Notes: generated by a model from the sequence alone, not told the origin. 64,000 bases of DNA from Macrostomum lignano (GCA_002269645.1 NIVC01000111.1:289633-353632), one strand, 5' to 3'. Positions 36,141 to 59,213 are shown, numbered from the stretch's first letter. Numbers and translations: made by a program.

Positions 36141-36627
36141 AGAATGAGTCAATGAAGAATTGTGTCAAGTTTGAAGTCAATCGCTTTACGTGGAGAAAAC
36201 TTATGGCAGCTGAAAGTTAGTCAATTTTGAAACCATTTTACACATCTGGGCCCAGATCGGGAAAGAGAGGCAGGCGGGCGGAGGTTGGGGTGGTTGCTAC
36301 GCTGAAAAAAACAGCCCAACTTTAAGAGTGCACAGCGGCTTTCAGGATTAACTTTAAGATTTGAAATTTTACACGATTGTGTCAAAATAGTTGAAAATTG
36401 TCTGTATCAAATTTGAAGAGAATCGGTAGAATTGGAGCGGCGCTATGGAGGATTTAGTGAAAAAATCGCGCATTTTGAGCAGTTTTTTGTACTTTTAGGT
36501 TGGAAGACTTGAGTCTAGGAAATTAAAAGGTAGCCTAAGACATTCTCCGTAGTAAGTTTAGGGTGGGTGTAAAGTTTGGTGTAATTTGGTTGAGCGGTTT
36601 GGGAGTCCATAGCGAAGTAATTTGTCC

Positions 36628-36668
<41 letters not shown>

Positions 36669-37128
36669 GTTTTGATTTTTATAGGTAGAGATAATAGTCC
36701 TTACAATAGAAAGATAATGCACAAGCTGCTAGTTGATTACAAATGAGTTACCTTATTCACTATTTGGCAGCAAACAAATTGGCAATAGACTAATTTACTA
36801 AATGGCAAATGCTACTAGATCTAAGTCCTTATCACAACAACCACTAATAATAATGATGGGTTTATTTGACTGGCAGTAGGCAAAACTACTAACTAAATAA
36901 AAAAGTGACAAGTTTATTAGACCCATACTAGTTAAATAGTAGCAAACTTTTTTGACCAGTGCTGGCTAAATAAGCACTGCCTAATATAATAATTTCATCA
37001 ACACCAGAACATGTATCATGTAGCTAAATATAAACCATCATATATTGTTATTGTATATCACATACAAACGAAATTATTTAGAAAATGTATTCCTGTTTGT
37101 TATAGACAATTATAATTCGCAGTACTTA

Positions 37129-42792: not shown

Positions 42793-42856
42793 ATGGAACT
42801 CGAGCCAACAAATAACAGTTCTGTTAATCAGCCCCTTAGTTGGGAGAAGTTAACAG
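42793..42856 (+). CDS. PH-3xSH2-like adaptor, exon 1 of 11 (tentative start)
   Basis: ATG GAA CTC...TTA ACA G|gtattt; phase 1 matches exon 2. Confidence 0.55.
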
Positions 42857-42964
42857 GTATTTAGTTTACATCATTTGCTCATGTAACTTAATTTAGACCC
42901 ATCTTTGTGTGTGAGGAGCTGTTCATACATAAATGCATCATCAACTTAATTAATGCTTTTCCAG

Positions 42965-43066
42965 CTGGCCTCATTGACAAAATTCTGCCCAATGACAACA
43001 GCAAAGTGCTGTACAAAGGCTTCATCTGTTTGAGAGACTGGTTTGATGACGACAAAGAGGATCAAT
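42965..43066 (+). CDS. PH-3xSH2-like adaptor exon 2 (PH start)
   Basis: ttttccag|, GLIDKILP...VLYKGFICLRDW, donor T|gtaaga. Confidence 0.75.
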
Positions 43067-43074
43067 GTAAGAGC

Positions 43075-43835
43075 TTGTGTACTGTACCAGATTGTGACCT
43101 GTACTGTACCAGATTGTGACCTGTACTGTACCAGATTGTGACCTGTACTGTACCAGATTGTGACCTGTACTGTACCAGATTGTGACCTGTACTGTACCAG
43201 ATTGTGACCTGTACTGTACCAGATTGTGACCTGTACTGTACCAGATTGTGACCTGTACTGTACCAGATTGTGACCTGTACTGTACCAGATTGTGACCTGT
43301 ACTGTACCAGATTGTGACCTGTACTGTACCAGATTGTGACCTGTACTGTACCAGATTGTGACCTGTACTGTACCAGATTAAAGTCTACATGTAGCTGTAC
43401 TGTACCACATTGGAGTTTAGCTGTACTGTACCAGATTAGAGTCTAGCTGTACTGTACCAGATTGTGACCTGTACTGTACCAGATTGGAGTCTAGCTGTAC
43501 TGTACCAGATTGTGACCTGTACTGTATCACATTGGAGTTTAGCTGTACTGTACCAGATTAGAGTCTAGTTATACTGTACAAGATTGTGACCTGTACTGTA
43601 CCAGATTGGAGTCTATCTGTAATGTACCCAGATTTGAGTCTAGCTGTACTGTATCAGATTGGAGTCTAGTTGTACCGTACCAGATTGTTACCTGTACTGT
43701 ACCTAAATTAGGGGTCTGTAAGCACTGTACCAGATTAGGAGTCTGTAAGCACTGTATCAGATTAGGGGTCTGTAAGCACTGTACCAGATTAGGGGTCTGT
43801 AAGCACTGTACCAGATTAGGGGTCTGTAAGCACTG
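43075..43835. repeat. 22-bp minisatellite (with a 27-bp variant at its end) filling intron 2
   Basis: Unit CTGTACTGTACCAGATTGTGAC. Confidence 0.95.
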
Positions 43836-43862
43836 TAACAATCTTCAATTTCCACACCCCAG

Positions 43863-43965
43863 GGTGCCACTACTGGGCGGTGATCCGTGCCGGTCATTTG
43901 TTTTTATTCCGCAACGCCGAGAAGTCTGCAATTTGTCAAAAGTACCACCTGCTGTGCCAATACTA
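43863..43965 (+). CDS. PH-3xSH2-like adaptor exon 3 (PH core)
   Basis: cccag|, WCHYWAVIRAGHLFLFRNAEK, donor TA|gtaagc. Confidence 0.8.
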
Positions 43966-45194
43966 GTAAGCTTCCAATTTGTTTAAACTGTTATGATTTC
44001 AGCGGATTTCTCGATCTTGTAGAGAAAATTTATAACTGGGATACATTTATGAGATGCTACTATAAGTAGGCTACACTAAGCAAAATATTACATAATGGAA
44101 GGCTTCAGTTCAATGCTAGAAAGAGTGAGACGAAAGATGGCATTTCTCGGGTTGTGCGCAATTCAATTGGCCTAGCTCTCGCTAGCCCAATGTTCTTAGG
44201 GTCCGCCCTGGAGGGGCTGTGCCTGATCTAAAAATAACCCTTTTTATTGCTATCCAATCAATTTGGCCCTCGGCCTTGGGTTAGGGGGGGGGGTGTACCT
44301 GGAGTGAGTTGGAGATCTGGACTGCAGTGTGGCTAGAACGGGACTTGAGCCCCCCCCCTGAGGCTGGCCCCGGGTTAGGGTTCAGGTGCTCCTCCCATTC
44401 TGCCATTCTTTGTGTTTTTATCTGGGCTGGCATCCCCGTGTTTTTATCCCTTTGTATTTTACCCGACCATTAGATTGCCATTCCAAATCTTGGAGTTATG
44501 AGCTCTGCCCTACCTGCCCGGTCCATCTGTTGTCTCCTCTGGTTGTCTCCCTGCCTATTGTGTCTTGGCTCTCATCTCTGACAGTGGATTGGAGTCCTAG
44601 CTGGGCTGGATGTTCGTCCCGAATCGGGGAAAACCGGCTGAGTCCGGTTTCCTCTTGCCCCTTGTGCCCCTCTCCGCCGCCCCCTTGGCCTGGCCTCCAA
44701 TATAGAGCTGGATAAGTGATACCCTTGAGGCTTGCAGCCCTATAAGAGGATTTTAGGAGCTTTTACCCCTTGACAGGAGACTCGCTCTCGGAAACAAGCC
44801 TTCCAGACTCACTCCAATATTAAGCCATTTCCGTAGACTTCAGGATATTCCCTGCTCTCGGACCGCTTTCAGTAGTAACCCAAACATTTTTTATTCCAAT
44901 TATTTTTTCGCGCACTCCCGAGATCTGTCTGCTGGGTGGTGGCCTGGGTGGAATTTCCTTGCACCGTCCCTGATTCCACTAATATTGGGTTGGCGGTGTC
45001 TTAGTCCATAAGGCTTGGGTTAGTAGCTCCCCTGGCCCAGACGTCAGGGTCCAACCTCGGGGTATCTCGGGCTAAGGCCCCTGGAAGTGCCCCTCAGCGG
45101 CAGAGCCCCTCCCAGAGCTGATCCGCGGGTAGCCCCCGGCTTCCCACACCCGTTTAACAACAACAGATCTCCTATTAGCACTCCTATCTCCTAT

Positions 45195-45994
45195 GATGCT
45201 GGGGATCTGCGGATAGAGCAGGTGATGCTGGGGATCTGCGGGTGGTGATTCTGGGGATCTGCGGGTGGTGATTCTGGGGATCTGCGGGTGGTGATTCTGG
45301 GATCTGCGGGTGGTGATTCTGGGGATCTGCGGGTGGTGATTCTGGGGATCTGTGGATGGAGGATGTGATGCTGGAGATCTGCGGGTGGTGACTCTGGGGA
45401 TCTGTGGATGGAGGATGTGATGCTGGGGATCTGCGGGTGGAGCAGGTGATGCTGGGGATCTGCGGGTGGAGCAGGTGATTTTGGGGATCTGCGGATGGAG
45501 GATGTGATGCTGGGGATCTGCGGATAGAGCAGGTGATGCTGGGGATCTGCGGATAGAGCAGGTGATGCTATGGATCTGTGGATAGAGCAGGTGATGCTGG
45601 GGATCTGTGGATAGAGCAGGTGATGCTGGGGATCTGCGGATAGAGCAGATGATGCTGAGGATTTGTGCATGGAGCAGGTGATGCTGAGGATTTGTGCATG
45701 GAGCAGGTGATGCTGGGGATCTGCGGATAGAGCAGGTGATGCTGGGGATCTGTGGATAGAGCAGGTGATGCTGGGGATCTGCGGATAGAGCAGATGATGC
45801 TGAGGATTTGTGCATGGAGCAGGTGATGCTGAGGATTTGTGCATGGAGCAGGTGATGCTGGGGATCTGCGGATAGAGCAGGTGATGCTGCGGATCTGTGG
45901 ATAGAGCAGGTGATGCTGAGGATTTGTGCATGGAGCAGGTGATGCTGGGGAGCTGTGCATGGAGCAGGTGATGCTGGGGAGCTGTGCATGGAGC
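45195..45994 (+). repeat. 29-bp minisatellite, forward copy block upstream of exon 4
   Basis: Unit AGCAGGTGATGCTGGGGATCTGCGGATAG. Confidence 0.95.
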
Positions 45995-46047
45995 ATGCAA
46001 TTTCACGATGTTTACCGCGAACCGAAAAACTAACCAACCAACCACAG

Positions 46048-46462
46048 CTTCGACTCGATGGAGAAGCGACACCACAGGCCGAAGGGCATGCTGTTTTGCC
46101 GGCTGCGAGCTCGCACGGACGCCACGGTGTGTCGGCCCGAGTCCAGCGGCGAGCTTGAGCTCGGCTGGACGGACGCGTACAGCTGGGAGCGGCCCCTGAA
46201 GAACAGCGTCGGAGGCCGGGAGGGCAAGTCCGCCGAGCTTGACGAGCTGGCAAGGCGTCGACGCGAAGAAGGTCTGCTGGCCTACCGCAGGTTGATGATC
46301 GCGCTGCGCTCGCAGGCCAAAGCCGACGCTCTTGAAGCAGCAGAAGCTGGTGAAAACTCCATTGCCCAAGTCAACGGAGCCTTCTCTGGAGAAAGCGACA
46401 GCGCGGACGTGACAAACTTCGACAGCATGCACGACATTCCGCTGCCGAGGCGAACGCCGAAG
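46048..46462 (+). CDS. PH-3xSH2-like adaptor exon 4 (PH end plus linker)
   Basis: cacag|C TTC GAC (phase 2), ...WTDAYSWERPLKNSV...DIPLPRRTPK, donor AAG|gtttga. Confidence 0.75.
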
Positions 46463-46533
46463 GTTTGAAATTATTTGCAGGGATTTTGTAGGTAGAGACT
46501 CGACCTGATCTCCTTCCAGAATCTTCTCCTTTG

Positions 46534-46849
46534 TCCACAGATCCCCAGCATCACCTGCTCCATCCACAGATCCCCAGCATCACTTGCTCCATCCACAGAT
46601 CCCCAGCATCACATGCTCCATCCACAGATCCGCAGCATCACCTGCTCCATCCACAGATCCTCAGCATCACCTGCTTCATCCACAGATCCCCAGCATCACA
46701 TGATCCATCCACAGATCCTCAGCATCACCTGCTGCATCCACAGATCCTCAGCATCACCTGCTGCATCCACAGTTCCCCAGCATCACCTGCTCCATCCACA
46801 GATCCTCAGCATCACCTGCTGCATCCACAGATCCTTAGCATCACCTGCT
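46534..46849 (-). repeat. Same 29-bp minisatellite in inverted orientation downstream of exon 4
   Basis: Unit ATCCACAGATCCCCAGCATCACCTGCTCC is the reverse complement of the 45195-45994 unit. Confidence 0.95.
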
Positions 46850-46969
46850 ACACCCTATCTCTTATCACCTGATCCTCATCAAACCCATCCCTTCTGACGC
46901 TGAGCTGGCAAAGCCGCTTGTGTCGCATGCGGTTCTCACGGAGCTGCACCCGCCCCCAAATACCCTCAG

Positions 46970-47510
46970 AAGTTCCCATTCGCCAACTTCGGCCTCAAAA
47001 AGTCCAAACCGAACTCCTACGAAGAGTCGTTCGGCACGCTACCCAGGCAGATTCCGGACGATCCGCAGCCGAGTTTTGAAACGCCGGCCGATGAGGCGAT
47101 CTACGATGACGCCATGGATTCTGGAATGACGGCAGCCTTAGCCAACAGGCAGTCTGAATCGCAGGTGGAAGAGGTCTACGATGAGGCAACGGAGTCTCCA
47201 CAACCGTCGGCTGAACTGGCGACCGGCCATGCCGACGAGGACCACTACGAAATTCCAGATGCCACCGACCCACCTGCTGCAAAGGCCTGGATGACTTCGA
47301 ACAATGACTCGAGACCTTCACGACCGCAGCAGCCGCTGCCACCGAAGCCTCGATTGCCTGCTGCCGCTACAGCTGCCTCTGGTTTTGCTTCTGCTTCTGC
47401 CGCTGGCGGCTGGAGAAAATGGTGACCAGCTACCAGCCGATCGACGCGTCAGTGAGATATTTCTATCAGGCCTATCAGAACCCGGCTGGACAAGCGGCTG
47501 AAGCTACTGT
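46970..47510 (+). CDS. PH-3xSH2-like adaptor exon 5 (Tyr/Pro-rich region and SH2 start); 1-nt frameshift near 47410
   Basis: ctcag|AAG TTC; SYEES, IYDDA, VYDEA, HYEIP, PLPPKP; then LEKMVTSYQ...RYFYQAYQNPAGQAAEAT in another frame; donor GT|gtgagt. Confidence 0.65.
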
Positions 47511-47910
47511 GTGAGTCTGATTGGCTGTGTCTGATTAGTAGCTGTGTCTGATTGGCTGTGTCTGATTGGCGGTGTCTAATTAGCTGTGTCTGATTGGCTG
47601 TGTCTGATTGGTAGCTGTGTCTGATTGGCTGTGTCTGATTGGCGGTGTCTAATTGGCTGTGTCTGATTGGCTGTGTCTGATTGGCGGTGTCTAATTGGCT
47701 GTGTCTGATTGGTAGCTGTGTCTGATTGGCTGTGTCTGATTGGCTGTGTCTAATTGGCTGTGTCTGATTGGCTGTGTCTGATTGGCGGTGTCTAATTGGT
47801 TGTGTCTGATTGGCTGTGTCTGATTGGCGGTGTCTAATTGGCTGTGTCTGATTGGCTGTGTCTGATTGGCTGTGTCTCATTGGTGGCTGTGTCTCATTGG
47901 CTGTGTCTGG
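47511..47910. repeat. 14-bp minisatellite starting at the splice donor
   Basis: Unit GTGTCTGATTGGCT. Confidence 0.93.
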
Positions 47911-48033
47911 GATTACGGAACTGACCTAAAAACAGGTCATGTGAGACGTATAGACATCCAGGACACCCAGGTGCCCTCAACAGTTACTCTAGAGAGCCCG
48001 AGATACTAAAACGACCCTCAAATTTCCCAACAG

Positions 48034-48306
48034 GAAGCTCTACCAAACCCCGCGCGGCACTTTCTGCGTTGTTGGTTTCACATCCAGCAAGCCGCTTAAA
48101 GTGTTTCTGCTGCTCGTGCAGACTGGCAGACGGGTGGCCACCTATCAGGTGTGCGAGCAGAGCGGCGGGTTCAAGGTGCTGCCATCGGAGGAGCGCCACC
48201 ACAGCATGAGCCAGCTGCTGTACCACCACCACATCTTTGACCTGCCCGTTAGCGATTCCAATCCAGAGACCGGGGTCCGGCTCCTTAGACCGCTTGACGG
48301 CGATGA
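48034..48306 (+). CDS. PH-3xSH2-like adaptor exon 6 (SH2-like domain 1, SH3BP2-like)
   Basis: KLYQTPRGTFCVVGFTSSKPLKVFLLLVQTGRRVATYQV...HHSMSQLLYHHHIFDLP...VRLLRP; donor GA|gtgaga, with TGA at 48308-48310 if unspliced. Confidence 0.75.
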
Positions 48307-48329
48307 GTGAGAAGATGGAAGGGCGGAGA

Positions 48330-48392
48330 AACAGACAGACGGACAGACAGACAGACACACAGGCAGACAGACAGACAGACAGACAGACAGGC

Positions 48393-48441
<49 letters not shown>

Positions 48442-48475
48442 CACAGGCAGACAGACAGACAGGCAGGCAGACAGG

Positions 48476-48513
<38 letters not shown>

Positions 48514-48524
48514 GGCAGGCAGGC

Positions 48525-48557
<33 letters not shown>

Positions 48558-48576
48558 GGCAGACAGGCAGACAGGC

Positions 48577-48621
<45 letters not shown>

Positions 48622-48644
48622 GGCAGACAGGCAGACAGACAGGC

Positions 48645-48685
<41 letters not shown>

Positions 48686-48688
48686 GGC

Positions 48689-48741
<53 letters not shown>

Positions 48742-49380
48742 GGCAGACAGACAGACAGGCAGACAGACAGACAGACAGGCAGACAGGGAGACAGACAGAC
48801 AGGCAGACAGGCAGACAGGCAGACAGGCAGACAGGCAGACAGACACACAGACAGACAGGCAGACAGGCAGACAGGCAGACAGACAGACAGGCAGACAGGC
48901 AGACAGGCAGACAGGGAGACAGACACACAGACAGACAGACAGACAGGCAGACAGGGAGACAGACAGACAGGCAGACAGACAGGCAGACAGGCAGACAGAC
49001 AGACAGGCAGACAGGCAGACAGGCAGACAGGGAGACAGGGAGACAGGCAGACAGGCAGACAGGCAGACAGGCAGACAGGCAGACAGACACACAGACAGAC
49101 AGGCAGACAGGCAGACAGGCAGACAGGGAGACAGACACACAGACAGACAGACAGACAGGCAGACAGGGAGACAGACAGACAGGCAGACAGGCAGACAGAC
49201 ACACAGACAGACAGGCAGACAGGCAGACAGGCAGACAGGCAGACACACAGAAAGACAGACAGACAGACAGACAGACAGACAGGCAGACAGACAGACAGAC
49301 AGGCAGACACACAGACAGACAGAGAGACAGGCAGACAGGGAGACAGACAGACAGGCAGACAGACACACAGACAGACACAG
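48330..49380. repeat. ~1-kb (CAGA/CAGG)n microsatellite
   Basis: cagacagacaggcaga runs. Confidence 0.97.
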
Positions 49381-49409
49381 ACTTGCAAGCCTTAATTTCA
49401 TCACTGCAG

Positions 49410-49469
49410 AGCCATCAGTTTTCACTGTGCTGCAGCTTGGACCCTGGGCGACCGGGTCCTGTGTCAAAA
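49410..49469 (+). CDS. PH-3xSH2-like adaptor exon 7
   Basis: ctgcag|A GCC ATC (EAISFHCAAAWTLGDRVLCQK), donor AA|gtaagt; phase 2-2. Confidence 0.65.
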
Positions 49470-49555
49470 GTAAGTTTCAAAATTCCATTAGCATAAATCA
49501 TTTAATCTGCCAGCACCGATAAGCGCTGAAAGATCAAAACCCGCAAATTTCGCAG

Positions 49556-49675
49556 GCTGTTTGGAGGCGCGCCGAGCGGCACATTTGCCGCCGTGAGCGA
49601 CGCAGCGACCAATCGCCTGTTCCTGTACGCCTCTCACAATGGCCAGCTCGTTAAGCTGCCCTGGAGCGCTCGGCT
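49556..49675 (+). CDS. PH-3xSH2-like adaptor exon 8 (SH2-like 2, N-half); probable 1-nt deletion in the CCC run near 49659
   Basis: cgcag|G CTG TTT (LFGGAPSGTFAAVSDAATNRLFLYASHNGQLVKLP), donor |gtgagt. Confidence 0.6.
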
Positions 49676-49905
49676 GTGAGTGACAAAGAGAGTGACAGAA
49701 TGATAGTGAGAGTGACAAAGAGAGTGACAAAGAGAGTGACAGAATGATAGTGAGAGTGACAAAGAGAGTGACAAAGAGAGTGACAGAATGATAGTGAGAG
49801 TGACAAAGAGAGTGACAGAATGATAGTGAGAGTGACAAAGAGAGTGACAGAATGATAGTGAGAGTGACAATGAGAGTGCCAGAATGATTTTAGAGTGACA
49901 ATGAG
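49676..49905. repeat. ~32-bp compound minisatellite starting at the splice donor
   Basis: Unit GTGAGAGTGACAAAGAGAGTGACAGAATGATA. Confidence 0.9.
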
Positions 49906-49986
49906 AGTTGGTGAGACCTGGTTACCCTAGAGTTGCTTCATGCCGTGAATAAGATAGCCTTATAGAGCCAACTGAAATAATTGCAG

Positions 49987-50132
49987 GGCAAGATTTGGGC
50001 CGAGCCACTCGTGAAATTCTCTTCACTGGAGGAGCTGCTGGTCCACTATCACCAGCATGAACTGGAGCTGACACTGAATAACAGCCAGAGACGCATGGGT
50101 CTCCGCCTGACGACCCCCTGTCAGCTGTCCGA
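49987..50132 (+). CDS. PH-3xSH2-like adaptor exon 9 (SH2-like 2, C-half)
   Basis: ttgcag|GKIWAEPLVKFSSLEELLVHYHQHEL...LRLTTPC, a classic SH2 C-terminus; donor GA|gtgagt. Confidence 0.78.
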
Positions 50133-50239
50133 GTGAGTCATCAAGTACATGTACATCCTGACGGTTGGAGATGCTCAAGATTTTAGATCGAGTCAATAAG
50201 TTTATAATATTTTAACACTAGGACAGAATCGAGGTAAAA

Positions 50240-50260
50240 GTGACAGACAGACACACAGAA

Positions 50261-50305
<45 letters not shown>

Positions 50306-50418
50306 CAAAGACAGACAGGCAGACAGACAGACACTAAGACAGACAGACAGACAGACACTAAGACAGACAGACAGACACTAAGACAGACAGATAGACAGAC
50401 ACTAAGACAGACAGACAG
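50240..50418. repeat. (CAGA)n microsatellite
   Basis: cagacaga runs. Confidence 0.93.
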
Positions 50419-50825
50419 AGGTAATCTACCCGAATCTACCCGCCAATCAGCGAGGGGAGGCCTCGGAGGCGGGGTGGGACAGGCCGAGGAGTGGGTCGCT
50501 CCCTTAGAGGGTCCGATTGCTTGGAATTTCCGATTAGCTGGGTATTGTGGGGCAAGAGATTCTATTGGTCGAGAAAAGCATTTAGAAGGGCACCGATTTC
50601 CTCGGAATTTCCGAGTTGAGGGGTATGTGAGGAAGGAATTCGATTGGTCGAGAGTCCTGGTGGTCCGAGCATGATTTCGTTGGTCAACACACCCCGCCTC
50701 CAGGGCCTCCCCATCGCTGATTGGCCAGCTAATCAGCAACGTGCACCAGACCGTACCATTTCCTACTACTCCTAATCAACCGGATTAGAAAAAGCAATCC
50801 GGAAATTTCCGATTTCCCCCTCCAG

Positions 50826-51078
50826 ACAAGTTGAGCGGAACATCAAGCGCTACCTGGGCCAGCAGATCGAGGAGGAGACCGAAGAGCTCCCGGGCTGCGG
50901 GACCCGCGGAGGCAGCGTACTCATCGAGACCAAGAAACTCGGACCCGTCACCGTGCAGAACGAGAGCAGCACCGACCTGTCGCTGGAGCCCGTGCCAATC
51001 CTGCAGGTGAAGCTGTCCAACAGCTACCAGTACAAGGGCCCGATCGATGTCAAATCCAGCGAATATCGCTGCTTCGAT
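50826..51078 (+). CDS. PH-3xSH2-like adaptor exon 10 (SH2-like 3, N-part)
   Basis: ctccag|A CAA GTT; RYLGQQIEEETEEL...GSVLIETK...EYRCFD; donor GAT|gtaagc. Confidence 0.7.
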
Positions 51079-51159
51079 GTAAGCCAATTGTTGATTGCAT
51101 GCGTTTTTATTAGTTTGAAGCAGGGGCTAGGTGTGCACCCCGGCGAGAGGCATTACTGA

Positions 51160-52658
51160 GCAGGCACACACTCACACAGGAGGGCCCCACTTTATTTATC
51201 ATTAGACATGTACACTTCACTGTGCCATGGGGGCCGGGCCTCAAGGCCGTTAATTGCACGAGCAGAGCCAAGCCGAGATTCCGATTTAGCCCCAAAATAA
51301 TTTGACTTCACCTGGAATCGAGACTGAGCTTGCTTGGACATCAGAGCCCCGCGCTTGACCACCGGCCCCCATTAAGCTCAGGAAGGATGTACAGCAGCTG
51401 ACTTTCCTGGGGGGGGGGGTTGGCTCTTATGGTGCAATCAAGTCTTAAAAGCAATAAGAAAGCAATTCCCATTTCCAGGAGACCTTCACAGTCAGACGCA
51501 ATCCAGAGATGACATTCGACAGTCTGGAGAAGCTCATGCTCTACGTTAGTTCGCATCATCAGAAGTTGCGTTAAAAAGTTCCCGAAAGGTGTCGTAACTG
51601 ATTGACTATCACAAGATATTACATTATTGGTAACTTACAGTCTGTACTTTGCTTACCCCAGAGTTGCCTCCGATAAAGCAAATTCAATTGATTTTAATTG
51701 AGCAAACATTTTCCAACAGCATCTCAATAAAACATACTCGTACTGACTGATTGTTTTCTCTATTTTTATATACTGTAATCCGATTTTACTCACCTAATTA
51801 GACTTCCTAAACAAAACAGTTCCAAATCTTTCCTCATGTTCACAGTGAAGTCCCACTTGAAGCTATGGTTTGTACGAGTGCTACAATGTTGTAGTTTAGA
51901 CTTGCTCTTCTAGCAGTGGCCCTTGGTTTAAAAGTCCATTAGGGAAGGTGGTCAACTTTATTCAAGCATATTGGACCATGGACAACAGGTTTATTGATAG
52001 AATAGCAAAAACAAAAATGTGTCACTTTCTTGTAGCCAATAGTCGAATTCACGGTCCGCTCCCCAGTTAGACCGGTGTTTGATGAAACTCCACAAGGTAC
52101 GCCATCACCTAACACAACCCGGATGTAAGTTCGGAAATTTTGTTTTCTAATGATAGGCAATGATTGGTCACAAACATTTTTCTTCTGAAACGGGTTCCTA
52201 AATGTCTATTAGGGGTCACAGGGTGCATATTTACTCTATGGTTAGAATATGGGGCTTCGGCCCCTCACTTCTAAGCGACGCTCTGCCTCTGCACCCCCGC
52301 TAGCAGCGGGAGATGTCTATGGTAAAAAGCCTACCTAACAACACATTATTATCACCCCTCCTCTTTTTCGAGTTGTTGTCTATGGCCAAACTAACCAACA
52401 GAAGAAGACCAAAAAGGCAGGGGCTGTGTGCACCCATAAGCGACATTGTCTCACAACTGGTGAGAGGCATTATTGCCCATTCCGCCGACTCCCGCGGATG
52501 CGTACGCAGTCATACGCACAGGCAAACCCTCATACAGGAGTGCACAGCGGTCCTAGCTTTATTTATCGTTAGGCATGTACACTTCACTGTGCCTTGGGGT
52601 GGGGGTTGGCCTTCAAGGGCGTTAATTGCACGAGCAGAGCCAAGCCGAGATTCCAATT
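51160..52658. repeat. Pair of ~130-bp direct repeats (51160-51287 and 52518-52658)
   Basis: Shared CATGTACACTTCACTGTGCC and GTTAATTGCACGAGCAGAGCCAAGCCGAGATTCC. Confidence 0.8.
51479..51574 (+). CDS. PH-3xSH2-like adaptor exon 11 (terminal)
   Basis: tttccag|ETFTVRRNPEMTFDSLEKLMLYVSSHHQKLR*; AATAAA at 51726. Confidence 0.62.
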   Translation, partial: ETFTVRRNPEMTFDSLEKLMLYVSSHHQKLR

Positions 52659-53268: not shown

Positions 53269-53392
53269 CTACAGCAGCTGGCAGGAGCAGCAGGAGTTGC
53301 TGGGCTGAGCGGCACCGCCTGCAGGCGGCTGCTTCTGCGGAATGTAAGAGAAACTCGGCGGCAGGTCGAAGCTCGGGCCATCGAACAGCATC
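53269..53392 (-). CDS. Uncharacterised repeat-domain CaaX protein, exon 8 of 8
   Basis: cgcag|G ATG CTG; MLFDGPSFDLPPSF...NSCCSCQLL*. Confidence 0.75.
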
Positions 53393-53417
53393 CTGCGGGT
53401 GCAGTGCCGGGCGGCTG

Positions 53418-53477
53418 TCCGTCTGTCTGTCTGTTTGTCTGTCTTAATGTCTGTCTGTCTGTCTGTCTGTTTGTCTA

Positions 53478-53514
<37 letters not shown>

Positions 53515-53531
53515 GTGTGTCTGTCGGTCTA

Positions 53532-53570
<39 letters not shown>

Positions 53571-53597
53571 GTCTGTGTGTCTGTCTGTCTTAATGCC

Positions 53598-53642
<45 letters not shown>

Positions 53643-53669
53643 GTCTGTGTGTCTGTCTGTCTTAATGCC

Positions 53670-53706
<37 letters not shown>

Positions 53707-53765
53707 GTCTGTCTGTCTGTCTATCTGTCTGTCTATCTGTCTGTGTGTGTGTCTGTCTTAATGCC

Positions 53766-53855
<90 letters not shown>
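53418..53855. repeat. (TGTC)n microsatellite filling intron 7
   Basis: gtctgtct runs. Confidence 0.95.
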
Positions 53856-53857
<2 letters not shown>

Positions 53858-53899
53858 GAGAGCTCAAACAGTGAACTGTGAACACAGTATTGAACGCAC

Positions 53900-54026
53900 C
53901 TGACAACGGTGAGTCGGTATCGTCCGTTGTAAGCCAGCTCAGGCCTGTAGGTGAGCTCTGTATTAATGGACGCAGCAGTCGGGTCCACGTACATGTTGAA
54001 TGTCTCGGCAGTGAGAACTCTACAGT
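53900..54026 (-). CDS. Uncharacterised CaaX protein exon 7
   Basis: tttcag|AC TGT (NCRVLTAETFNMY...RLTVV), donor AG|gtgcgt. Confidence 0.75.
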
Positions 54027-54185
54027 CTGAAAGCAAGAGCAAGTTTCAAAGTAGTTTATGAGAAATCTTGTTTAAGAGGACTCTAGTTTATGAGCAATGT
54101 AGTTTGTGGGGACTCTAATTTATGAGGATTCTAGTTGTCCCAGATTGAGGAATCAGAAGCGCACGTAAACACTGGAGCCACTCAC

Positions 54186-54351
54186 TGGCCTTGGCGGCGC
54201 CATCAAGCAGTCGCTGCATGAATCTGTTCAGCGGTTCGAAACTCTTCACCGAGATCCGGTCGGGCACAAACAGCTTCGAGGTCACCAGGCCCGAGTTTGT
54301 GGGCAGGCCTGTCTGCAGCCCGGCTGTGAGAGGCGACTTCACGTAGGCCAC
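54186..54351 (-). CDS. Uncharacterised CaaX protein exon 6
   Basis: cccag|GTG GCC TAC; KLFVPDRISVKSFEPLNRFMQRL; donor A|gtgagt. Confidence 0.78.
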
Positions 54352-54399
54352 CTGGGTGGGGAATTAATGAGGGATTTCGCTTGATTTCAGATCTATCAC

Positions 54400-55260
54400 T
54401 TCTGTACACACTTCTTTGAACACACATCCCTGTGTACAATCTTTGTACACACCTCTGAACAAACCTCTGTACACATCCATCTGTACACACCTCTGAAAAA
54501 AACTCTGTACACATCCATCTGTACACACCCATCTGTACACACCCATCTGTACACATCCATCTGTACACACCCATCTGTACACACCCATCTGTACACATCC
54601 ATCTGTACACACCCATCTGTACACACCCATCTGTACACACCCATCTGTACACACCCATCTGTACACACCCATCTGTACACACCCATCTGTACACCTATCT
54701 GTACACATCCATCTGTACACACCCATCTGTACACACCCATCTGTACACACCCATCTGTACACACCCATCTGTACACATCCATCTGTACACACCCATCTGT
54801 ACACATCCATCTGTACACACCCATCTGTACACATCCATCTGTACACACCCATCTGTACACATCCATCTGTACACATCCATTTGTACACATCCATCTGTAC
54901 ACATCCATCTGTACACGTTTCTGAAGAAATATCTGTACACATCCATCTGTACACACCCATCTGTACACATCCATCTGTACACACCCATCTGTAAACATCC
55001 ATCTGTACACATCCATATGTACACACCCATCTGTACACACCCATCTGTACACATCCATCTGTACACACCCATCTGTACACATCCATCTGTACACGCCTCT
55101 GAACAAATATCTGTACACATCCATCTGTACACGCCTCTGAACAAATATCTGTACACACCCATCTGTACACGCCTCTGAACAAATATCTGTGCATATCTAT
55201 CCGTACACACATCTGTACACATCCTTCTGTAAACATCTCTGTACCGGTACACCTCTCTGT
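54400..55260. repeat. 14-bp minisatellite filling intron 5
   Basis: Unit CATCTGTACACACC. Confidence 0.95.
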
Positions 55261-55291
55261 ACACATTTCCCCTGAGCACAGCTCTCCTCAC

Positions 55292-55458
55292 CCGGATGCA
55301 GGTGTGCTCCCTGAAGGGCACGCCAGCCGGCAGGAACTCATAAGACATGTTGCCGTCAAGTTGCAGCAGTTTGTTCATGTTGCTGGGCCCCAGCTGCTGC
55401 TGATCGTCCGCCTCGCGTTGACTGCGCAGAGCGATTTGCACCGGGCTCATTAGGAAGT
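55292..55458 (-). CDS. Uncharacterised CaaX protein exon 5
   Basis: cgcag|AC TTC CTA (DFLMSPVQ...EHTCIR), donor CGG|gtgagg. Confidence 0.72.
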
Positions 55459-55569
55459 CTGCGGGTGTATCGGTATGGGTATGGGACACTTTTGCTAGGT
55501 AAGCACACGTGGGAGACGTGGGAGACAGGAAAAGCAGGCCAGATAAAGGATAGGAATGATAGAGATTAT

Positions 55570-55975
55570 AGGAGATGGGAAACTACTCGTAGGATAGGGG
55601 GAAGGAGAGACGAGGAGAGATAAGAGGGGAGACGGGAGAGAGGAGATGGGAGATGGGAAGTGAAAGAGGGGAGACGGGATAGGGGAGATGGGAGACGGGA
55701 GAGGGGAGATGGGAGACGGGAGAGGGGAGATGGGAGACGGGAGAGGGGAGATGGGAGACGGGAGAGGGGAGATGGGAGACGGGAGAGGGGAGATGGGAGG
55801 GGAGACGGGAGAGGGGAGATGGGAGATCGGAGAGGGGAGATCGGAGATCGGAGAGGGGAGATAGGAGATGGGAATTGGAAGAAGGGAGACGGGATAGGGG
55901 AGATGGGAGACGGGAGAGGGGAGATGGGAGGGGAGACGGGATAGGGGGGTTGGGAGATCGGAGAGGGGAGATGGG
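55570..55975. repeat. 21-bp purine-rich minisatellite in intron 4
   Basis: Unit GGAGACGGGAGAGGGGAGATG. Confidence 0.93.
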
Positions 55976-56019
55976 CAAGGCAAGAGAGTAGAGACAGAAC
56001 AAGTACATAGAGCACCAAC

Positions 56020-56215
56020 CGCAGGTGGTGATGTTGAAGCTCTGCACGTCGGTGACCCGAGCTCCGGTGAGAGTGGAGGCAAACGACAGCGCATTGGTCA
56101 GAACAGTCTGGTAATCTTCGTATCGATTTGGCGCGGGAATGATCATGCTGTGCCTGTGCAAGTTGCTGTGCATTTGGCGGGGCTTGTAGTCCGGGTGCAC
56201 GTCTGGCACGAATAC
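56020..56215 (-). CDS. Uncharacterised CaaX protein exon 4
   Basis: tccag|GTA TTC GTG (VFVPDVHP...YEDYQTVLTNALSF...RVTDVQSF), donor G|gttggt. Confidence 0.75.
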
Positions 56216-56294
56216 CTGGATAGAGTTAGCGGGAGACTTGGTATTATTGGATTCCTATCAAGCATATCTCTCTTGTCAATATTTTAAGGCTCTT

Positions 56295-56930
56295 TCTTAT
56301 AGGGTTTTAGGGCGATTTCTTTTAGGGTTTTAGGGCGATTTCTTATAAGGTTTTAGGGCGATTTCTCATAGGGTTTTAGGGCGATTTCTCATAGGGTTTT
56401 AGGGCGATTTCTTATAGGGTTTTAGGGCGAATTCTCATAGGGTTTTAGGGCGATTTCTCATAGGGTTTTAGGGCGATTTCTCATAGGGTTTTAGGGCGAT
56501 TTCTCATAGGGTTTTAGGGCGATTTCTCATAGGGTTTTAGGGCGATTTCTCATAGGGTTTTAGGGCGATTTCTCATAGGGTTTTAGGGCGATTTCTCATA
56601 GGGTTTTAGGGCGATTTCTTATAGGGTTTTAGGGCGATTTCTCATAGGTTTTGGGGCGATTTCTCATGAGGTTTTTAAGCGATTTCTCATGAGGTGTTTA
56701 AGCGATTTCTCATGAGGTGTTTAAGCGATTTCTCATGAGGTGTTTAAGCGATTTCTCATAGGGTTTTAGGGCGATTTCTCATAGGGTTATAGGGCGAGTT
56801 CTCATAGGGTTATAGGACGAGTTCTCATAGGGTTATAGGGCGAGTTCTCATAGGGTTTTAGGGCGAGTTCTCATATGGTTATAGGGCGAGTTCTCATAGG
56901 GTTTTAGGGCGAGTTCTCATAGGGTTTCAG
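56295..56930. repeat. 23-bp minisatellite in intron 3
   Basis: Unit AGGGTTTTAGGGCGATTTCTCAT. Confidence 0.95.
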
Positions 56931-56974
56931 GACGATCCATAGAATTCCATAGTCGCAAGGCCAACTGCGCCAAC

Positions 56975-57596
56975 CTTGATCCCGATCTCCTGCCGCGGCA
57001 GCGGGTCTCCCACAATGTAGAACAGCCGGTAATAAAACAGCCGCATCCTGCTGACCTCTGCCAGGTGCCACTGAACCGTGGCGTCCAAGTCGAACTTTCG
57101 CTGATCAACTGCACACCGAAGCAGCATGGTCTGGACACCGCAGATCCTGCCAGGCGGAGGACTGGCCGACAGCCATTCGTTGATCCTGGGCAGAAACTCG
57201 GACAGCGGCTCAACAAAGGGCACGGAGAACTCTTTAGTAAAGGTTGGCACACAGGCGGACATGCCGTAGTTGTCCATGCCGCCAGCGGACTCGTCAAAGC
57301 CGAACCCGGGCCGCACTTGAGCGGCAATGGTTCGCTGCTCAATTCTCGGCATAGCGTTGATGTACCAGATCTGGGTTGGCTCGATCTCCTTCAGGCTGGC
57401 CCGCGGCTCCTGCCGGCACCACAGGCGGAGCCCGACGACGAAGGCGCGGATGAGGCGGCCAGGCTCGTGCTGCAGGGCCGCCTCGGGCTGCAGCTCGCCC
57501 TGCATGTTGGCCATCCGCTCGATGCACTCGCACCGGACCAGGGCGGAGATGCCGCGGTTGCTCGCCAGCCAGTTGTTGGCGGCCGACACCACCGTG
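56975..57596 (-). CDS. Uncharacterised CaaX protein exon 3
   Basis: tcaag|C ACG GTG (TVVSAANNWL...FVEPLSEFLPRINEWL...EIGIK), donor AAG|gttggc. Confidence 0.8.
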
Positions 57597-57789
57597 CTTG
57601 AGGGATAGAATGGATGCACTTTTGAGAACGAAAAGTACATGTGCACTTTTAGCGATGGAAAATTTAATAGATGCGCATGAGACTCTGAAAAAAGAGTTGA
57701 TTTGATAGATACTCGTAGCTATGAGATTCTGAAAGAGATTTGATTGATGGTAATGAGATTCTGAGAGAGATGGGGAATGAGGCTCCCAG

Positions 57790-58245
57790 AGAGATTTGAC
57801 AGTCAGGCATGAGACTCTGAGAGAGATTTGACAGACGGGCATGAGACTCTGAGAGAGATTTGACAGTCAGGCATGAGACTCTGAGAGAGATTTGACAGAC
57901 GGGCATGAGACTCTGAGAGAGATTTGACAGTCAGGCATGAGACTCTGAGAGAGATTTGACAGTCAGGCATGAGACTCTGAGAGAGATTTGACAGTCAGGC
58001 ATGAGACTCTGAGAGAGATTTGACAGTCAGGCATGAGACTCTGAGAGAGATTTGGCAGTCAGGCATGAGACTCAGAGAGATTTGACAGACGGGCATGAGA
58101 CTTTGAGAGAGATTTGACACATGGTTATGAGATTCTGAGAGAGATTTTATATATGGCTATGAGACTCTGAGAGAGATTTGATACATGGCTATGAGATTCT
58201 GAGAGAGATTTTATATATGGCTATGAGACTGAGAGAGATTTGACA
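57790..58245. repeat. 32-bp minisatellite in intron 2
   Basis: Unit GAGACTCTGAGAGAGATTTGACAGTCAGGCAT. Confidence 0.95.
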
Positions 58246-58294
58246 AATGGACAGGAGACCGCAGTACCACCAATACAGAGCTAGACTTGCTCAC

Positions 58295-58577
58295 TTAAAC
58301 GGCATAAACTGCGGACACCGCTGCGCCTGCAGGTTACCCGGGGCAACGCAGGCTGGGAAGAAATCCACCGCAGTCAGCAGCTGCTCGAAACGCTGCATTG
58401 GCCGGTCGATCGACGAATTCGAGCCTTTGACAGACGAGCCCTGCGGCAGGGTCGCCGACTGCGGCGGCGGTGGATATCTCGGCTGGCATGGAATCGGCGG
58501 TGGGCAGGCCGAGGCGTCATCGTTGGCGTAGGCGGGCAGCTGGTACAGGTCGGCGTCTGGAATGCGTTGCCGTGGGG
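58295..58577 (-). CDS. Uncharacterised CaaX protein exon 2
   Basis: caaag|CC CCA CGG (Pro-rich, then LLTAVDFFPAC...QFMPF), donor AA|gtgagc. Confidence 0.72.
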
Positions 58578-58580
58578 CTT

Positions 58581-59080
58581 TGCATCCGCCTACTCACCCC
58601 TTCCGCCCACGCATCCGCCTACTCACCCTTCCACCCACTCATCCGCCTACTCACCCCTTCCGCCCACGCATCCGCCTACTCACCCTTCCACCCACTCATC
58701 CACCTACTCACCCCTTCCGCCCACGCATCTGCCTACTCACCCTTCCACCCACGCATCTGCCTACTCACCCTTCCGCCCACGCATCCGCCTACTCACCCCT
58801 TCCGCCCACGCATCCGCCTACTCACCCTTTCCGCCCACGCATCCACCTACTCACCCTTTCCGCCCACGCATCCACCTACTCACCCTTTCCGCCCATGCAC
58901 CCGCCTACTCACCCTTTCCGCACACGCACCTGCCTACTCACCCTTTCCGCCCACGCATCCGCCTACTCACCCTTTCCGCCCATGCACCCGCCTACTCACC
59001 CTTTCCGCACACGCACCTGCCTACTCACCCCTTCCGCCCACGCATCCGCCTACTCACCCCTTCCGCCCAAGCATATCCGT
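58581..59080. repeat. 29-bp minisatellite in intron 1; units carry G|GTGAGT on the transcribed strand
   Basis: Plus-strand unit GCATCCGCCTACTCACCCCTTCCGCCCAC. Confidence 0.95.
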
Positions 59081-59134
59081 AGCCACCGCCTACGCATATC
59101 AATAAACTCCAACTCAACGCAATCACTGTCTCAC

Positions 59135-59213
59135 CTCTTATAGCCTCATAGTAGCCGGGCGGCAGGTTGAATCCCGGCTCCTTGGTGGCATCATTAGGCT
59201 CAGTTGACGCCAT
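59135..59213 (-). CDS. Uncharacterised CaaX protein exon 1; joined CDS 1764 nt, 587 aa
   Basis: tttcag-ccagc-ATG; MASTEPNDATKEPGFNLPPGYYEAIR; donor G|gtgaga. Confidence 0.68.

What the first reader, a model, noticed from the sequence alone, without database searches (positions are those of the whole stretch)
42793..51574. Unusual adaptor: PH domain, phosphotyrosine/proline-rich linker and three tandem SH2-like domains, all lacking the FLVR arginine
Seen: 11 phase-compatible exons give about 724 aa. The SH2 betaB strands read GTFCVV, GTFAAV and GSVLIE, and the C-terminal helices read SMSQLLYHH, SSLEELLVHY...LRLTTPC and DSLEKLMLY. The linker has YEES, YDDA, YDEA, YEIP and PLPPKP. Established: the betaB5 Arg (FLVR) is needed for pTyr binding; SH3BP2 and STAP have PH plus a single SH2. 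Inference: a lineage-specific scaffold with triplicated pseudo-SH2 modules, an architecture I do not recognise. The third domain is the least certain.
Basis: partly seen in the sequence, partly recalled or inferred. Interest (0 to 1): 0.72.

Follow-up and report, generated by a model that had tools for sequence, protein, structure and literature searches.

The report
Flatworm adaptor with degenerate tandem SH2 domains
This is a real, already annotated but uncharacterised gene of the flatworm Macrostomum lignano for a signalling adaptor with two genuine SH2 domains and a third decayed one, all lacking the arginine that normally grips phosphotyrosine; it is a modestly interesting lineage-specific variant, and this copy carries two one-base frame breaks.

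Summary
The window is Macrostomum lignano scaffold NIVC01000111.1 (assembly Mlig_3_7). All 11 GT-AG exons and every quoted motif are present. However, this copy has two one-base homopolymer deletions, at 47405-47410 and 49659-49661, that break the frame. NCBI therefore annotates it as a truncated 562-aa protein, BOX15_Mlig013114g1. Intact copies exist elsewhere: a syntenic 722-aa copy (BOX15_Mlig007324g1) and a 724-aa UniRef model.

- **Modules 1 and 2** are SH2 domains. The module 2 profile hits PLCgamma1 at E 1.6e-7. Module 1 hits Src at E 0.0035 and matches module 2 at 92% hhalign probability. Both have Val at betaB5.
- **Module 3** is probably SH2-derived. Its hhalign scores exceed all 200 column shuffles. 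Its register is uncertain, so "GSVLIE" may be betaC rather than betaB.
- **The PH domain** is not supported by my tests. Only UniRef's automatic name and a beta2-beta3 pattern favour it.
- **Structure prediction failed** (AlphaFold pLDDT 36 and 41).

All relatives found are M. lignano paralogues. Two of them keep Arg at betaB5 in both SH2 domains, so the loss is derived. Substitutions between the two copies indicate purifying selection (dN/dS about 0.24).

I read it as an SH3BP2-like docking protein whose SH2 array no longer reads phosphotyrosine in the canonical way. Interest is moderate.

The parts
42793..42856 (+). Exon 1, with the start codon at 42793 (aa 1-21)
   Evidence: Identical to the L001 exon. 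The annotated CDS of P0012 starts here.
42965..43066 (+). Exon 2 (aa 22-55), AG/GT borders
43863..43965 (+). Exon 3 (aa 56-89)
46048..46462 (+). Exon 4 (aa 90-228): end of the PH-like region, then a predicted long helix
   Evidence: The helix 152-190 comes only from a low-confidence model.
43006..46204 (+). PH-like region, about aa 36-141, spanning parts of exons 2-4. Unverified.
   Evidence: No Pfam or PDB-profile hit. UniRef names P0011 and P0012 'PH domain-containing protein'.
46970..47510 (+). Exon 5: acidic Tyr motifs (YEES, YDDA, YDEA, YEIP), the PLPPKPRLP motif, and the start of SH2-1
   Evidence: PxxP and Y-E-x-P are conserved in paralogue P0004, and PxxP also in P0005.
47405..47410 (+). 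Frame break 1: one G missing from a G run compared with the syntenic copy. The premature TGA falls at 47423-47425.
47443..48306 (+). SH2 domain 1 (end of exon 5 plus exon 6, with intron 5 between). betaB is GTFCVV at 48056-48073, with Val at betaB5.
   Evidence: Pfam SH2 scores 17 bits, below the 21-bit cut-off. The profile hits Src SH2 at E 0.0035 and nearly all hits are SH2. hhalign against module 2 gives 91.6%. It scores 22.8 bits against a canonical-SH2 HMM, and 0 of 500 shuffles reach that.
48034..48306 (+). Exon 6
49410..49469 (+). Exon 7 (start of SH2-2, W-x-L-G)
49556..49675 (+). Exon 8 (betaB is GTFAAV at 49578-49595, with Val at betaB5)
49659..49661 (+). Frame break 2: CCC where the syntenic copy has CCCC. 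The annotated CDS then stops at 50012-50014.
49987..50132 (+). Exon 9 (alphaB is SSLEELLVHY; betaG is LRLTTPC)
49410..50132 (+). SH2 domain 2 (exons 7-9)
   Evidence: The profile hits PLCgamma1 at E 1.6e-7, VAV2 at 1e-5, and p85alpha, SYK, Src and SHP2. The single sequence hits p85 cSH2 at E 0.0024.
50826..51078 (+). Exon 10 (module 3, first part; GSVLIE at 50911-50928)
51479..51574 (+). Exon 11 (module 3 alphaB is FDSLEKLMLY; stop TAA at 51572-51574)
   Evidence: Identical to the L001 exon.
50826..51571 (+). Module 3: a degenerate, probably SH2-derived C-terminal domain whose strand register is uncertain
   Evidence: No Pfam or PDB hit. hhalign of the four-paralogue profile gives 90.8% against an SH2 alignment that includes the family's own SH2 domains, and 26% against six canonical SH2 domains. 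Both scores exceed all 200 column shuffles. At most 1 of 500 shuffles reaches the real HMM score. AlphaFold pLDDT was 41 and the Foldseek result is meaningless.

Best explanation
Window 42793-51574 (+) holds one real, transcribed 11-exon gene of Macrostomum lignano. It encodes a cytoplasmic docking or adaptor protein of about 722-724 aa. The protein has four parts:
1. An N-terminal region that looks PH-like but is unverified.
2. A helical stretch.
3. An acidic linker with four Tyr motifs and a conserved PxxP motif.
4. A C-terminal array of two true SH2 domains followed by a third, decayed SH2-derived module.

It belongs to a small paralogous family so far seen only in M. lignano. Two sister paralogues keep the betaB5 arginine in both SH2 domains. 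This gene and its nearest paralogue have replaced it (Val/Val here, His/Leu in P0004). This gene has also lost the basic betaD6 residue in both domains. The loss of canonical phosphotyrosine binding is therefore derived, yet the protein is still under purifying selection.

Inferred mechanism: the protein works like SH3BP2. It is recruited to membranes or receptors and phosphorylated on the linker tyrosines (the conserved Y-E-x-P is a likely Crk/Nck/Abl-type site). It is bound by SH2 and SH3 partners through the linker. Its own SH2 array now makes phospho-independent contacts, either with partners or within the molecule, as JAK-family SH2 domains do.

The copy in this window has two single-base homopolymer deletions. 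These are more likely polishing errors in a PacBio assembly than real lesions.
For: Shown:
- The exon set in the syntenic copy translates exactly to the RNA-seq-guided model P0001. The annotation method is described in PMC5730564.
- The window is identical to NIVC01000111.1, and its gene is annotated as P0012.
- SH2-2 profile: PLCgamma1 E 1.6e-7. SH2-1 profile: Src E 0.0035. SH2-1 against SH2-2: 91.6%.
- A phase-2 intron sits at the same aligned column in both domains. This follows from the exon lengths and the alignment.
- betaB5 residues are V/V here, H/L in P0004, R/R in P0008 and R/R in P0010. betaD6 is Q/P here against R/R in P0008.
- Module 3 is SH2-like. hhalign scores of 40.2 and 25.3 compare with shuffle maxima of 16.8 and 17.1, and the HMM alignments are collinear.
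- Only M. lignano proteins were found among 1.84 billion representatives and in three profile or word searches.
- Between the two copies there are 15 synonymous and 12 non-synonymous codon changes over 500 synonymous and 1660 non-synonymous sites (P = 0.0003). In the SH2 region the counts are 9 and 4 (P = 0.0005).
- Both frame breaks are one-base losses in G or C runs. An intact 724-aa model of the same allele exists (P0015).
- Module 1 aligns with the SH3BP2 SH2 domain, including the H-x-H-x-LP...LLR-x-PY tail.

Inferred: membrane recruitment, phosphorylation of the linker, and phospho-independent binding. The precedent is JAK SH2 domains and the human SH2 domains that lack this Arg (PMC7530234).
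Against: - No structure could be obtained (pLDDT 36 and 41). The SH2 and PH folds therefore rest on sequence alone.
- Pfam's SH2 model scores module 1 below its cut-off and misses modules 2 and 3 of this protein.
- The PH region fails every test I ran.
- Module 3 has no hit to any solved structure or Pfam family. Its best support depends on an alignment that draws betaA, alphaA and betaB from two messy gene models (P0009, P0010).
- Two other assembly copies are also annotated as truncated (P0011, P0013), so some copies may truly be decaying.
- No binding or phosphorylation data exist.
- SH2-2 keeps the alphaA2 Arg and a betaD4 Lys, so residual phosphotyrosine binding is not excluded.
Confidence: 0.68

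Rival explanations
1. The window copy is a genuine decaying duplicate (pseudogene). It would have been left by the recent genome duplication or karyotype redundancy of the DV1 line. The function would then be carried only by the intact copy on NIVC01000112.1.
For: There are two independent frame breaks. NCBI annotates a truncated 562-aa product ending at 50014. Two further copies (P0011, 399 aa; P0013, 379 aa) are also cut in the exon-5 low-complexity stretch. The assembly holds 180 Mb of duplicated blocks at 95% identity or more (PMC5730564).
Against: Both lesions are single-base losses in homopolymer runs, which is the typical error of a PacBio or Canu assembly. All splice sites are intact. 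There is no other stop. Substitutions against the intact copy are biased towards synonymous changes. An intact 724-aa model of the same allele exists in the other assembly's annotation (P0015).
Confidence: 0.3
2. The SH2 domains still read phosphotyrosine by a non-canonical pocket, as the C-terminal SH2 domain of p120RasGAP does with betaD4, betaD6 and BC-loop residues. On this view the protein is a working tandem-SH2 reader, not a pseudo-reader.
For: Non-canonical phosphotyrosine recognition without use of the FLVR Arg is documented (PMC7530234). SH2-2 keeps the alphaA2 Arg and has Lys at betaD4. The domains are under purifying selection.
Against: SH2-1 has no basic residue at alphaA2, betaB5, betaD4 or betaD6. 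SH2-2 has Pro at betaD6, where the Arg-bearing paralogue has Arg. The replacements at betaB5 differ between the two Arg-less paralogues (V/H and V/L), as expected once constraint on that position is lost.
Confidence: 0.2
3. The C-terminal module (aa 608-722) is not an SH2 derivative. It would be an unrelated lineage-specific domain that happens to end in an F-x-S-L-E-K-L helix, making the protein a two-SH2 adaptor with a novel tail.
For: There is no Pfam or PDB hit for any paralogue's module 3. Small-profile hhalign against module 2 aligns only 24 columns at 31%, and finds nothing against module 1. Two MAFFT alignments disagree on which segment is betaB. AlphaFold gave no confident fold.
Against: hhalign of the four-paralogue profile covers 84 collinear columns of the SH2 model at 90.8%, E 1.2e-6. 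Scores against both SH2 alignments exceed all 200 column shuffles. HMM scores of all four paralogues are reached by at most 1 of 500 shuffles, even with a model built from canonical SH2 domains only. P0010 carries G-N-F-L-V-L-R-R-S followed by S-L-V-V-R-D-D-H-G-S-V-K-T-F-R-I, in the order of betaB, betaC and betaD. Modules 2 and 3 both start at a phase-2 intron inside a Glu codon, and each has a phase-0 intron 10-12 residues before the F-x-S-L-E helix (derived).
Confidence: 0.22

Closest known systems
SH3BP2 (3BP2) docking protein
   Same: The order of parts is the same: an N-terminal PH-type region, a long linker with acidic tyrosine sites and a proline-rich SH3 ligand, then a C-terminal SH2 domain. 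Module 1 aligns with the SH3BP2 SH2 domain through the H-x-H-x-LP...LLR-x-PY tail. hhalign gives 84%, E 7e-6, and the PDB hit is 2cr4. An acidic D-E-D-(H)-Y-E-x-P site lies just upstream of the SH2 domain in both. Its SH2 part agrees with the 2cr4 alignment printed.
   Different: SH3BP2 has a single SH2 domain with the betaB5 Arg. This protein has two SH2 domains plus a third degenerate module, and no betaB5 Arg. The PH regions do not match significantly. Orthology was not shown. Src and PLCgamma SH2 domains score as well or better.
Tandem-SH2 proteins (PLCgamma1, PI3K p85alpha, SYK/ZAP-70, SHP2)
   Same: Two SH2 domains lie back to back. The best database matches of module 2 are the PLCgamma1 tandem SH2 (E 1.6e-7), VAV2, and the C-terminal SH2 domain of p85alpha. 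The Arg-bearing paralogues P0008 and P0010 look like ordinary tandem readers.
   Different: This protein has no catalytic or SH3 domain. It carries a third SH2-like module, whereas humans have 121 SH2 domains in 111 proteins (PMC9783222), which I read as at most two per protein. The betaB5 Arg is absent from both domains of this gene.
SH2 domains that lack the FLVR arginine (TYK2 and RIN2 with His, SH2D5 with Trp; JAK-family SH2 domains)
   Same: The betaB5 Arg is replaced, and the domain is kept as a protein-binding module that does not need phosphotyrosine (PMC7530234). Module 1 of paralogue P0004 has His at betaB5, as TYK2 and RIN2 do.
   Different: Here the residue is Val in two adjacent domains, and betaD6 is also lost. 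The domain context (PH-like region, linker, SH2 array) is unrelated to JAK, RIN or SH2D5.
STAP1/STAP2 (PH plus SH2 adaptors) and the Spt6 tandem SH2
   Same: STAP proteins have a PH region followed by an SH2 or SH2-like domain in a small adaptor that is itself tyrosine-phosphorylated (from general knowledge). Spt6 has a tandem SH2 whose second domain lacks the canonical pocket (PMC7530234).
   Different: No sequence match to either was seen in any search. The number of domains and the linker differ.

Membership tests
SH2 domain (Pfam PF00017), module 1 | Significant match to an SH2 sequence profile | tested here: met
   Pfam gives 17 bits, below the 21-bit cut-off. The four-sequence profile hits Src SH2 at E 0.0035, and nearly all 37 hits are SH2. 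hhalign against module 2 gives 91.6%. It scores 22.8 bits against a canonical-only HMM, and 0 of 500 shuffles reach that.
SH2 domain (Pfam PF00017), module 2 | Significant match to an SH2 sequence profile | tested here: met
   The profile hits PLCgamma1 at E 1.6e-7, VAV2 at 1e-5, and p85alpha, SYK, Src and SHP2. The single sequence hits p85 cSH2 at E 0.0024. The P0008 orthologous module scores 26-31 bits in Pfam, above the cut-off.
SH2 domain (Pfam PF00017), module 3 | Significant match to an SH2 sequence profile | tested here: inconclusive
   There is no Pfam or PDB hit. hhalign gives 90.8% against an SH2 alignment that includes family modules 1 and 2, but only 26% against six canonical SH2 domains. 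Both scores are above all 200 column shuffles. The register is ambiguous.
SH2 domain | Arg at betaB5 (FLVR), needed for canonical phosphotyrosine binding | tested here: not met
   Val in module 1 (GTFCVV) and Val in module 2 (GTFAAV), by alignment to Src and p85. In module 3 the position is Glu, or the strand is absent, depending on the alignment. Arg is present in paralogues P0008 and P0010.
SH2 domain | Alpha-beta-alpha sandwich fold | not testable with these tools
   AlphaFold2 gave pLDDT 36 for the full length as a single sequence, and 41 for module 3 with a five-row alignment. Foldseek on the latter found nothing at E 0.001 or better. No further prediction jobs were allowed.
PH domain (Pfam PF00169 and relatives) | Significant match to a PH profile | tested here: inconclusive
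   No Pfam hit at E up to 10. No PDB-profile hit. In hhalign, 11 of 200 shuffles reached it. The weak alignments do fall on beta2-beta3 (W-x-x-Y-W-A-V-I-R-x-x-x-L-F-L-F). UniRef's automatic name for the window's own product is 'PH domain-containing protein'.
SH3BP2 family | Orthology: SH3BP2 as the best reciprocal match, with one PH and one SH2 domain | tested here: not met
   SH3BP2 is not the best SH2 match (Src and PLCgamma1 score better). The PH regions do not align significantly. The number of domains differs. The resemblance is in layout only.
Tandem-SH2 readers (SYK/ZAP-70, SHP, p85, PLCgamma type) | Two adjacent SH2 domains, each able to bind phosphotyrosine | tested here: not met
   The adjacency is met. 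The pocket residues are not. SH2-1 has no basic residue at alphaA2, betaB5, betaD4 or betaD6. SH2-2 has Val at betaB5 and Pro at betaD6. Binding itself was not tested.

The most novel reading that the evidence does not exclude
A Macrostomum-specific family of adaptors carries three SH2-derived domains in a row, an architecture not seen in the human SH2 complement. One branch of the family has converted the whole array from phosphotyrosine readers into phospho-independent binding modules while staying under selection. This would be a natural, recent case of the birth of a pseudo-reader scaffold, with reader and pseudo-reader paralogues side by side in a flatworm that can be made transgenic.
Probability: 0.3. 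Interest if true: 0.55.

Novelty: new variant of a known kind. Interest (0 to 1): 0.4.

Why it matters
Humans have 121 SH2 domains, and only three of them lack the FLVR arginine. No human protein is known to have three SH2 domains. Here one genome holds paralogues with and without the arginine. That makes a natural before-and-after pair for asking what an SH2 domain does once it stops reading phosphotyrosine. M. lignano offers RNAi and transgenesis to test this.

The practical points are more ordinary:
- The gene is already in GenBank as a hypothetical protein.
- The window copy is mis-annotated as truncated because of two probable homopolymer errors.
- Several UniProt models of the family are fused or frame-shifted.

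Tried and rejected
1. **A 71-nt GT-AG mini-intron (47382-47452) to repair exon 5**. Rejected: the syntenic copy and P0001 read straight through, and the difference is one missing G.
2. **An alternative GTTAAG donor at 49650 to repair exon 8**. Rejected for the same reason.
3. **AlphaFold2 of full-length P0001 as a single sequence.** pLDDT 36, unusable.
4. **AlphaFold2 of module 3 with a five-row paralogue alignment.** pLDDT 41. Foldseek against PDB found nothing at E 0.001 or better, TM 0.3 or below, and COMMD or OprM noise.
5. **Searches for relatives outside M. lignano.** I ran a word-indexed search with the protein, two profile searches and an exhaustive phmmer of 1.84 billion representatives. 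All returned M. lignano only. The first profile search was swamped by the proline-rich stretch. One call failed on an E-value limit.
6. **PH tests.** None was significant.
7. **Small-profile hhalign of module 3 against modules 1 and 2.** Weak.
8. **A relic exon for betaA, alphaA and betaB of module 3 in intron 9.** None found.
9. **Literature searches** for the gene identifier and for proteins with three SH2 domains. Nothing relevant.

Full report
**What the sequence is**

The window is eukaryotic DNA with short exons set among long minisatellite-filled introns. A protein search identified it as Macrostomum lignano. Window 32793-60014 is identical, with no mismatch in 27,222 bases, to NIVC01000111.1:322425-349646 of assembly Mlig_3_7, GCA_002269645.1.

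**Gene model**

Eleven exons with AG/GT borders lie at the coordinates listed under parts. A syntenic second copy of the locus is L001 (NIVC01000112.1). It is collinear with the window through exons and introns at 90-100% identity. The same eleven exons in L001 translate exactly to the NCBI protein BOX15_Mlig007324g1 (P0001, 722 aa).

That annotation was made from genome-guided RNA-seq assemblies with TransDecoder (PMC5730564). Transcripts therefore join exons 1-11.

**Frame breaks in the window copy**

The exons are not all in phase in this window.
- Exon 5 has GGCGGC at 47405-47410 where L001 has GGCGGGC.
- Exon 8 has CCC at 49659-49661 where L001 has CCCC.

Each break brings a stop within a few codons. 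NCBI accordingly annotates this copy as BOX15_Mlig013114g1 (P0012, 562 aa). Its CDS ends at 50014, and a 17-nt pseudo-intron patches exon 5.

Several points favour assembly error:
- Both lesions are one-base losses in homopolymers, in a Canu assembly of PacBio reads.
- All splice sites are intact.
- An intact 724-aa model of the same allele exists (P0015).
- The 27 codon differences from L001 are biased towards synonymous changes. There are 15 synonymous and 12 non-synonymous changes over 500 and 1660 sites (P = 0.0003). From codon 383 onward the counts are 9 and 4 (P = 0.0005).

I favour assembly error at about 70:30 over real decay. Only reads can decide.

**SH2 domains 1 and 2**

Pfam's SH2 model scores module 1 at only 17 bits, against a cut-off of 21, and misses modules 2 and 3.

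Profiles built from the paralogues are clearer:
- Module 2 hits the PLCgamma1 tandem SH2 at E 1.6e-7 and VAV2 at 1e-5, then p85alpha, SYK, Src and SHP2.
- Module 1 hits Src at E 0.0035, and nearly all of its 37 hits are SH2 domains.
- Modules 1 and 2 match each other at 91.6% hhalign probability.

A phase-2 intron falls at the same aligned column, 8-9 residues before G-T-F, in both modules. This follows from the exon lengths and the alignment.

Alignment to Src and p85 places Val at betaB5 in both modules. The basic betaD6 residue is also gone: Gln in module 1 and Pro in module 2, where paralogue P0008 has Arg. SH2-1 has no basic residue at alphaA2, betaB5, betaD4 or betaD6. SH2-2 keeps the alphaA2 Arg and has Lys at betaD4.

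**Module 3**

No Pfam or PDB match was found for this module in any paralogue. Small-profile comparisons gave only the F-x-S-L-E-K-L helix.

A fourth paralogue (P0010) was informative. It shows A-I-F-T-T-G...G-N-F-L-V-L-R-R-S, then S-L-V-V-R-D-D-H-G-S-V-K-T-F-R-I, then P-E-L-V-T-D-R-I-E-K-M. That is the SH2 order of betaA, alphaA, betaB, betaC, betaD and alphaB.

The statistical support is as follows:
- A four-paralogue profile of module 3 aligns with an SH2 alignment (six canonical domains plus family modules 1 and 2) over 84 columns at 90.8%, E 1.2e-6.
- Against the six canonical domains alone it scores 26%, E 7e-4.
- Both scores (40.2 and 25.3) exceed all 200 column-shuffled controls, whose maxima were 16.8 and 17.1.
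- HMM scores of each paralogue's module 3 were reached by at most 1 of 500 shuffles.

Modules 2 and 3 also both begin at a phase-2 intron inside a Glu codon. Each has a phase-0 intron 10-12 residues before the helix motif.

I take module 3 to be SH2-derived, with about 75% confidence. Its register in this gene is unsettled. The alignment with higher identity makes it betaC, with betaA to betaB missing and a 26-residue insert before alphaB. No relic exon lies in intron 9.

**PH region**

Every test I could run was non-significant. The weak alignments do fall on the beta2-beta3 motif. UniRef's automatic name for P0011 and P0012 is 'PH domain-containing protein'. The region is plausible as a PH domain but not shown to be one.

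**Family and direction of change**

An exhaustive phmmer of 1.84 billion representatives and three other searches found only M. lignano proteins:
- P0004/P0007: 36% identity, same full layout, betaB5 His and Leu.
- P0005/P0008/P0009 and P0010/P0017: betaB5 Arg in both SH2 domains.

Canonical SH2 domains have Arg at this position. The loss is therefore derived in the branch holding this gene. The differing replacements fit relaxed constraint at that one position.

The PxxP motif before SH2-1 is shared by three paralogue groups. The Y-E-x-P motif is shared with P0004.

**Mechanism**

The following is inferred, not shown. The protein is laid out like the docking protein SH3BP2. It has a membrane or receptor-targeting head and a linker that is phosphorylated on acidic tyrosines. 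The linker is bound by SH2 and SH3 partners. The C-terminal SH2 array no longer grips phosphotyrosine in the canonical way. It is kept for phospho-independent contacts, as in JAK SH2 domains and the three human SH2 domains without the Arg (PMC7530234).

A non-canonical phosphotyrosine pocket of the p120RasGAP type is a rival. It is weakened by the loss of betaD6 in both domains.

**Comparison and novelty**

Humans have 121 SH2 domains in 111 proteins (PMC9783222). I read this as at most two per protein. A layout of a PH-like region, a linker and three SH2-derived modules is not one I could find described. The literature searches were limited.

The gene is already deposited as a hypothetical protein, and UniProt labels it by domain. 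I therefore rate it a new variant of a known kind, of moderate interest.

**Limits**
- There is no usable structure.
- There are no sequences from outside M. lignano.
- Several paralogue models are fused or frame-shifted.
Only the SH3BP2 SH2 part was checked against tool output.

Noticed in passing
window 45335-45995 and 46534-46849: Exon 4 (46048-46462, 415 nt) is flanked by the same 29-nt minisatellite in opposite orientations, in introns 3 and 4. The arms are about 335 nt long and 84-89% complementary, 540-1000 nt apart. The syntenic copy L001 has the same arrangement. Such inverted intronic repeats could pair in the pre-mRNA and favour exon-4 skipping, which would shift the frame, or a circular RNA.
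   Followed up: partly
window 28448-36674: About 8.2 kb is present here but absent from the syntenic copy L001. The annotation places a 1595-aa gene (Helitron_like_N, PIF1 helicase) in it, on the minus strand. It overlaps the span of the HYOU1-like HSP70 gene. This looks like a copy-specific Helitron insertion. Conversely, L001 2576-5822 has no counterpart at window 38620.
   Followed up: no
window 48331-49377 and 50242-50419: A run of about 1 kb of (ACAG)n, 131 copies of an 8-nt period, fills most of intron 6. It recurs in intron 9. Introns 2, 5 and 8 hold other minisatellites of 22, 14 and 32 nt. Array lengths differ between the two copies.
   Followed up: no
window 47369-47385: The NCBI CDS of this copy (P0012) reads ...PAAA/CFCFCRWRLEKM.... 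This implies that a 17-nt gap is used as an 'intron' to step over the exon-5 frame break. It is an annotation artefact rather than a real splice.
   Followed up: partly
window 53269-59210 (-): A 579-aa gene on the minus strand has no Pfam hit. It is conserved in position in both copies. UniProt models P0002 and P0003 wrongly fuse the adaptor gene to sequence from this side, and are named 'CNH domain-containing' and 'Tensin 2'.
   Followed up: no
other M. lignano loci (P0004/P0007, P0005/P0008/P0009, P0010/P0017): Paralogues of the adaptor are annotated only as fragments or fusions. One (P0007) is fused to an SR splicing factor. P0009 appears frame-shifted within SH2-2. The family needs re-annotation before any comparative work.
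   Followed up: partly
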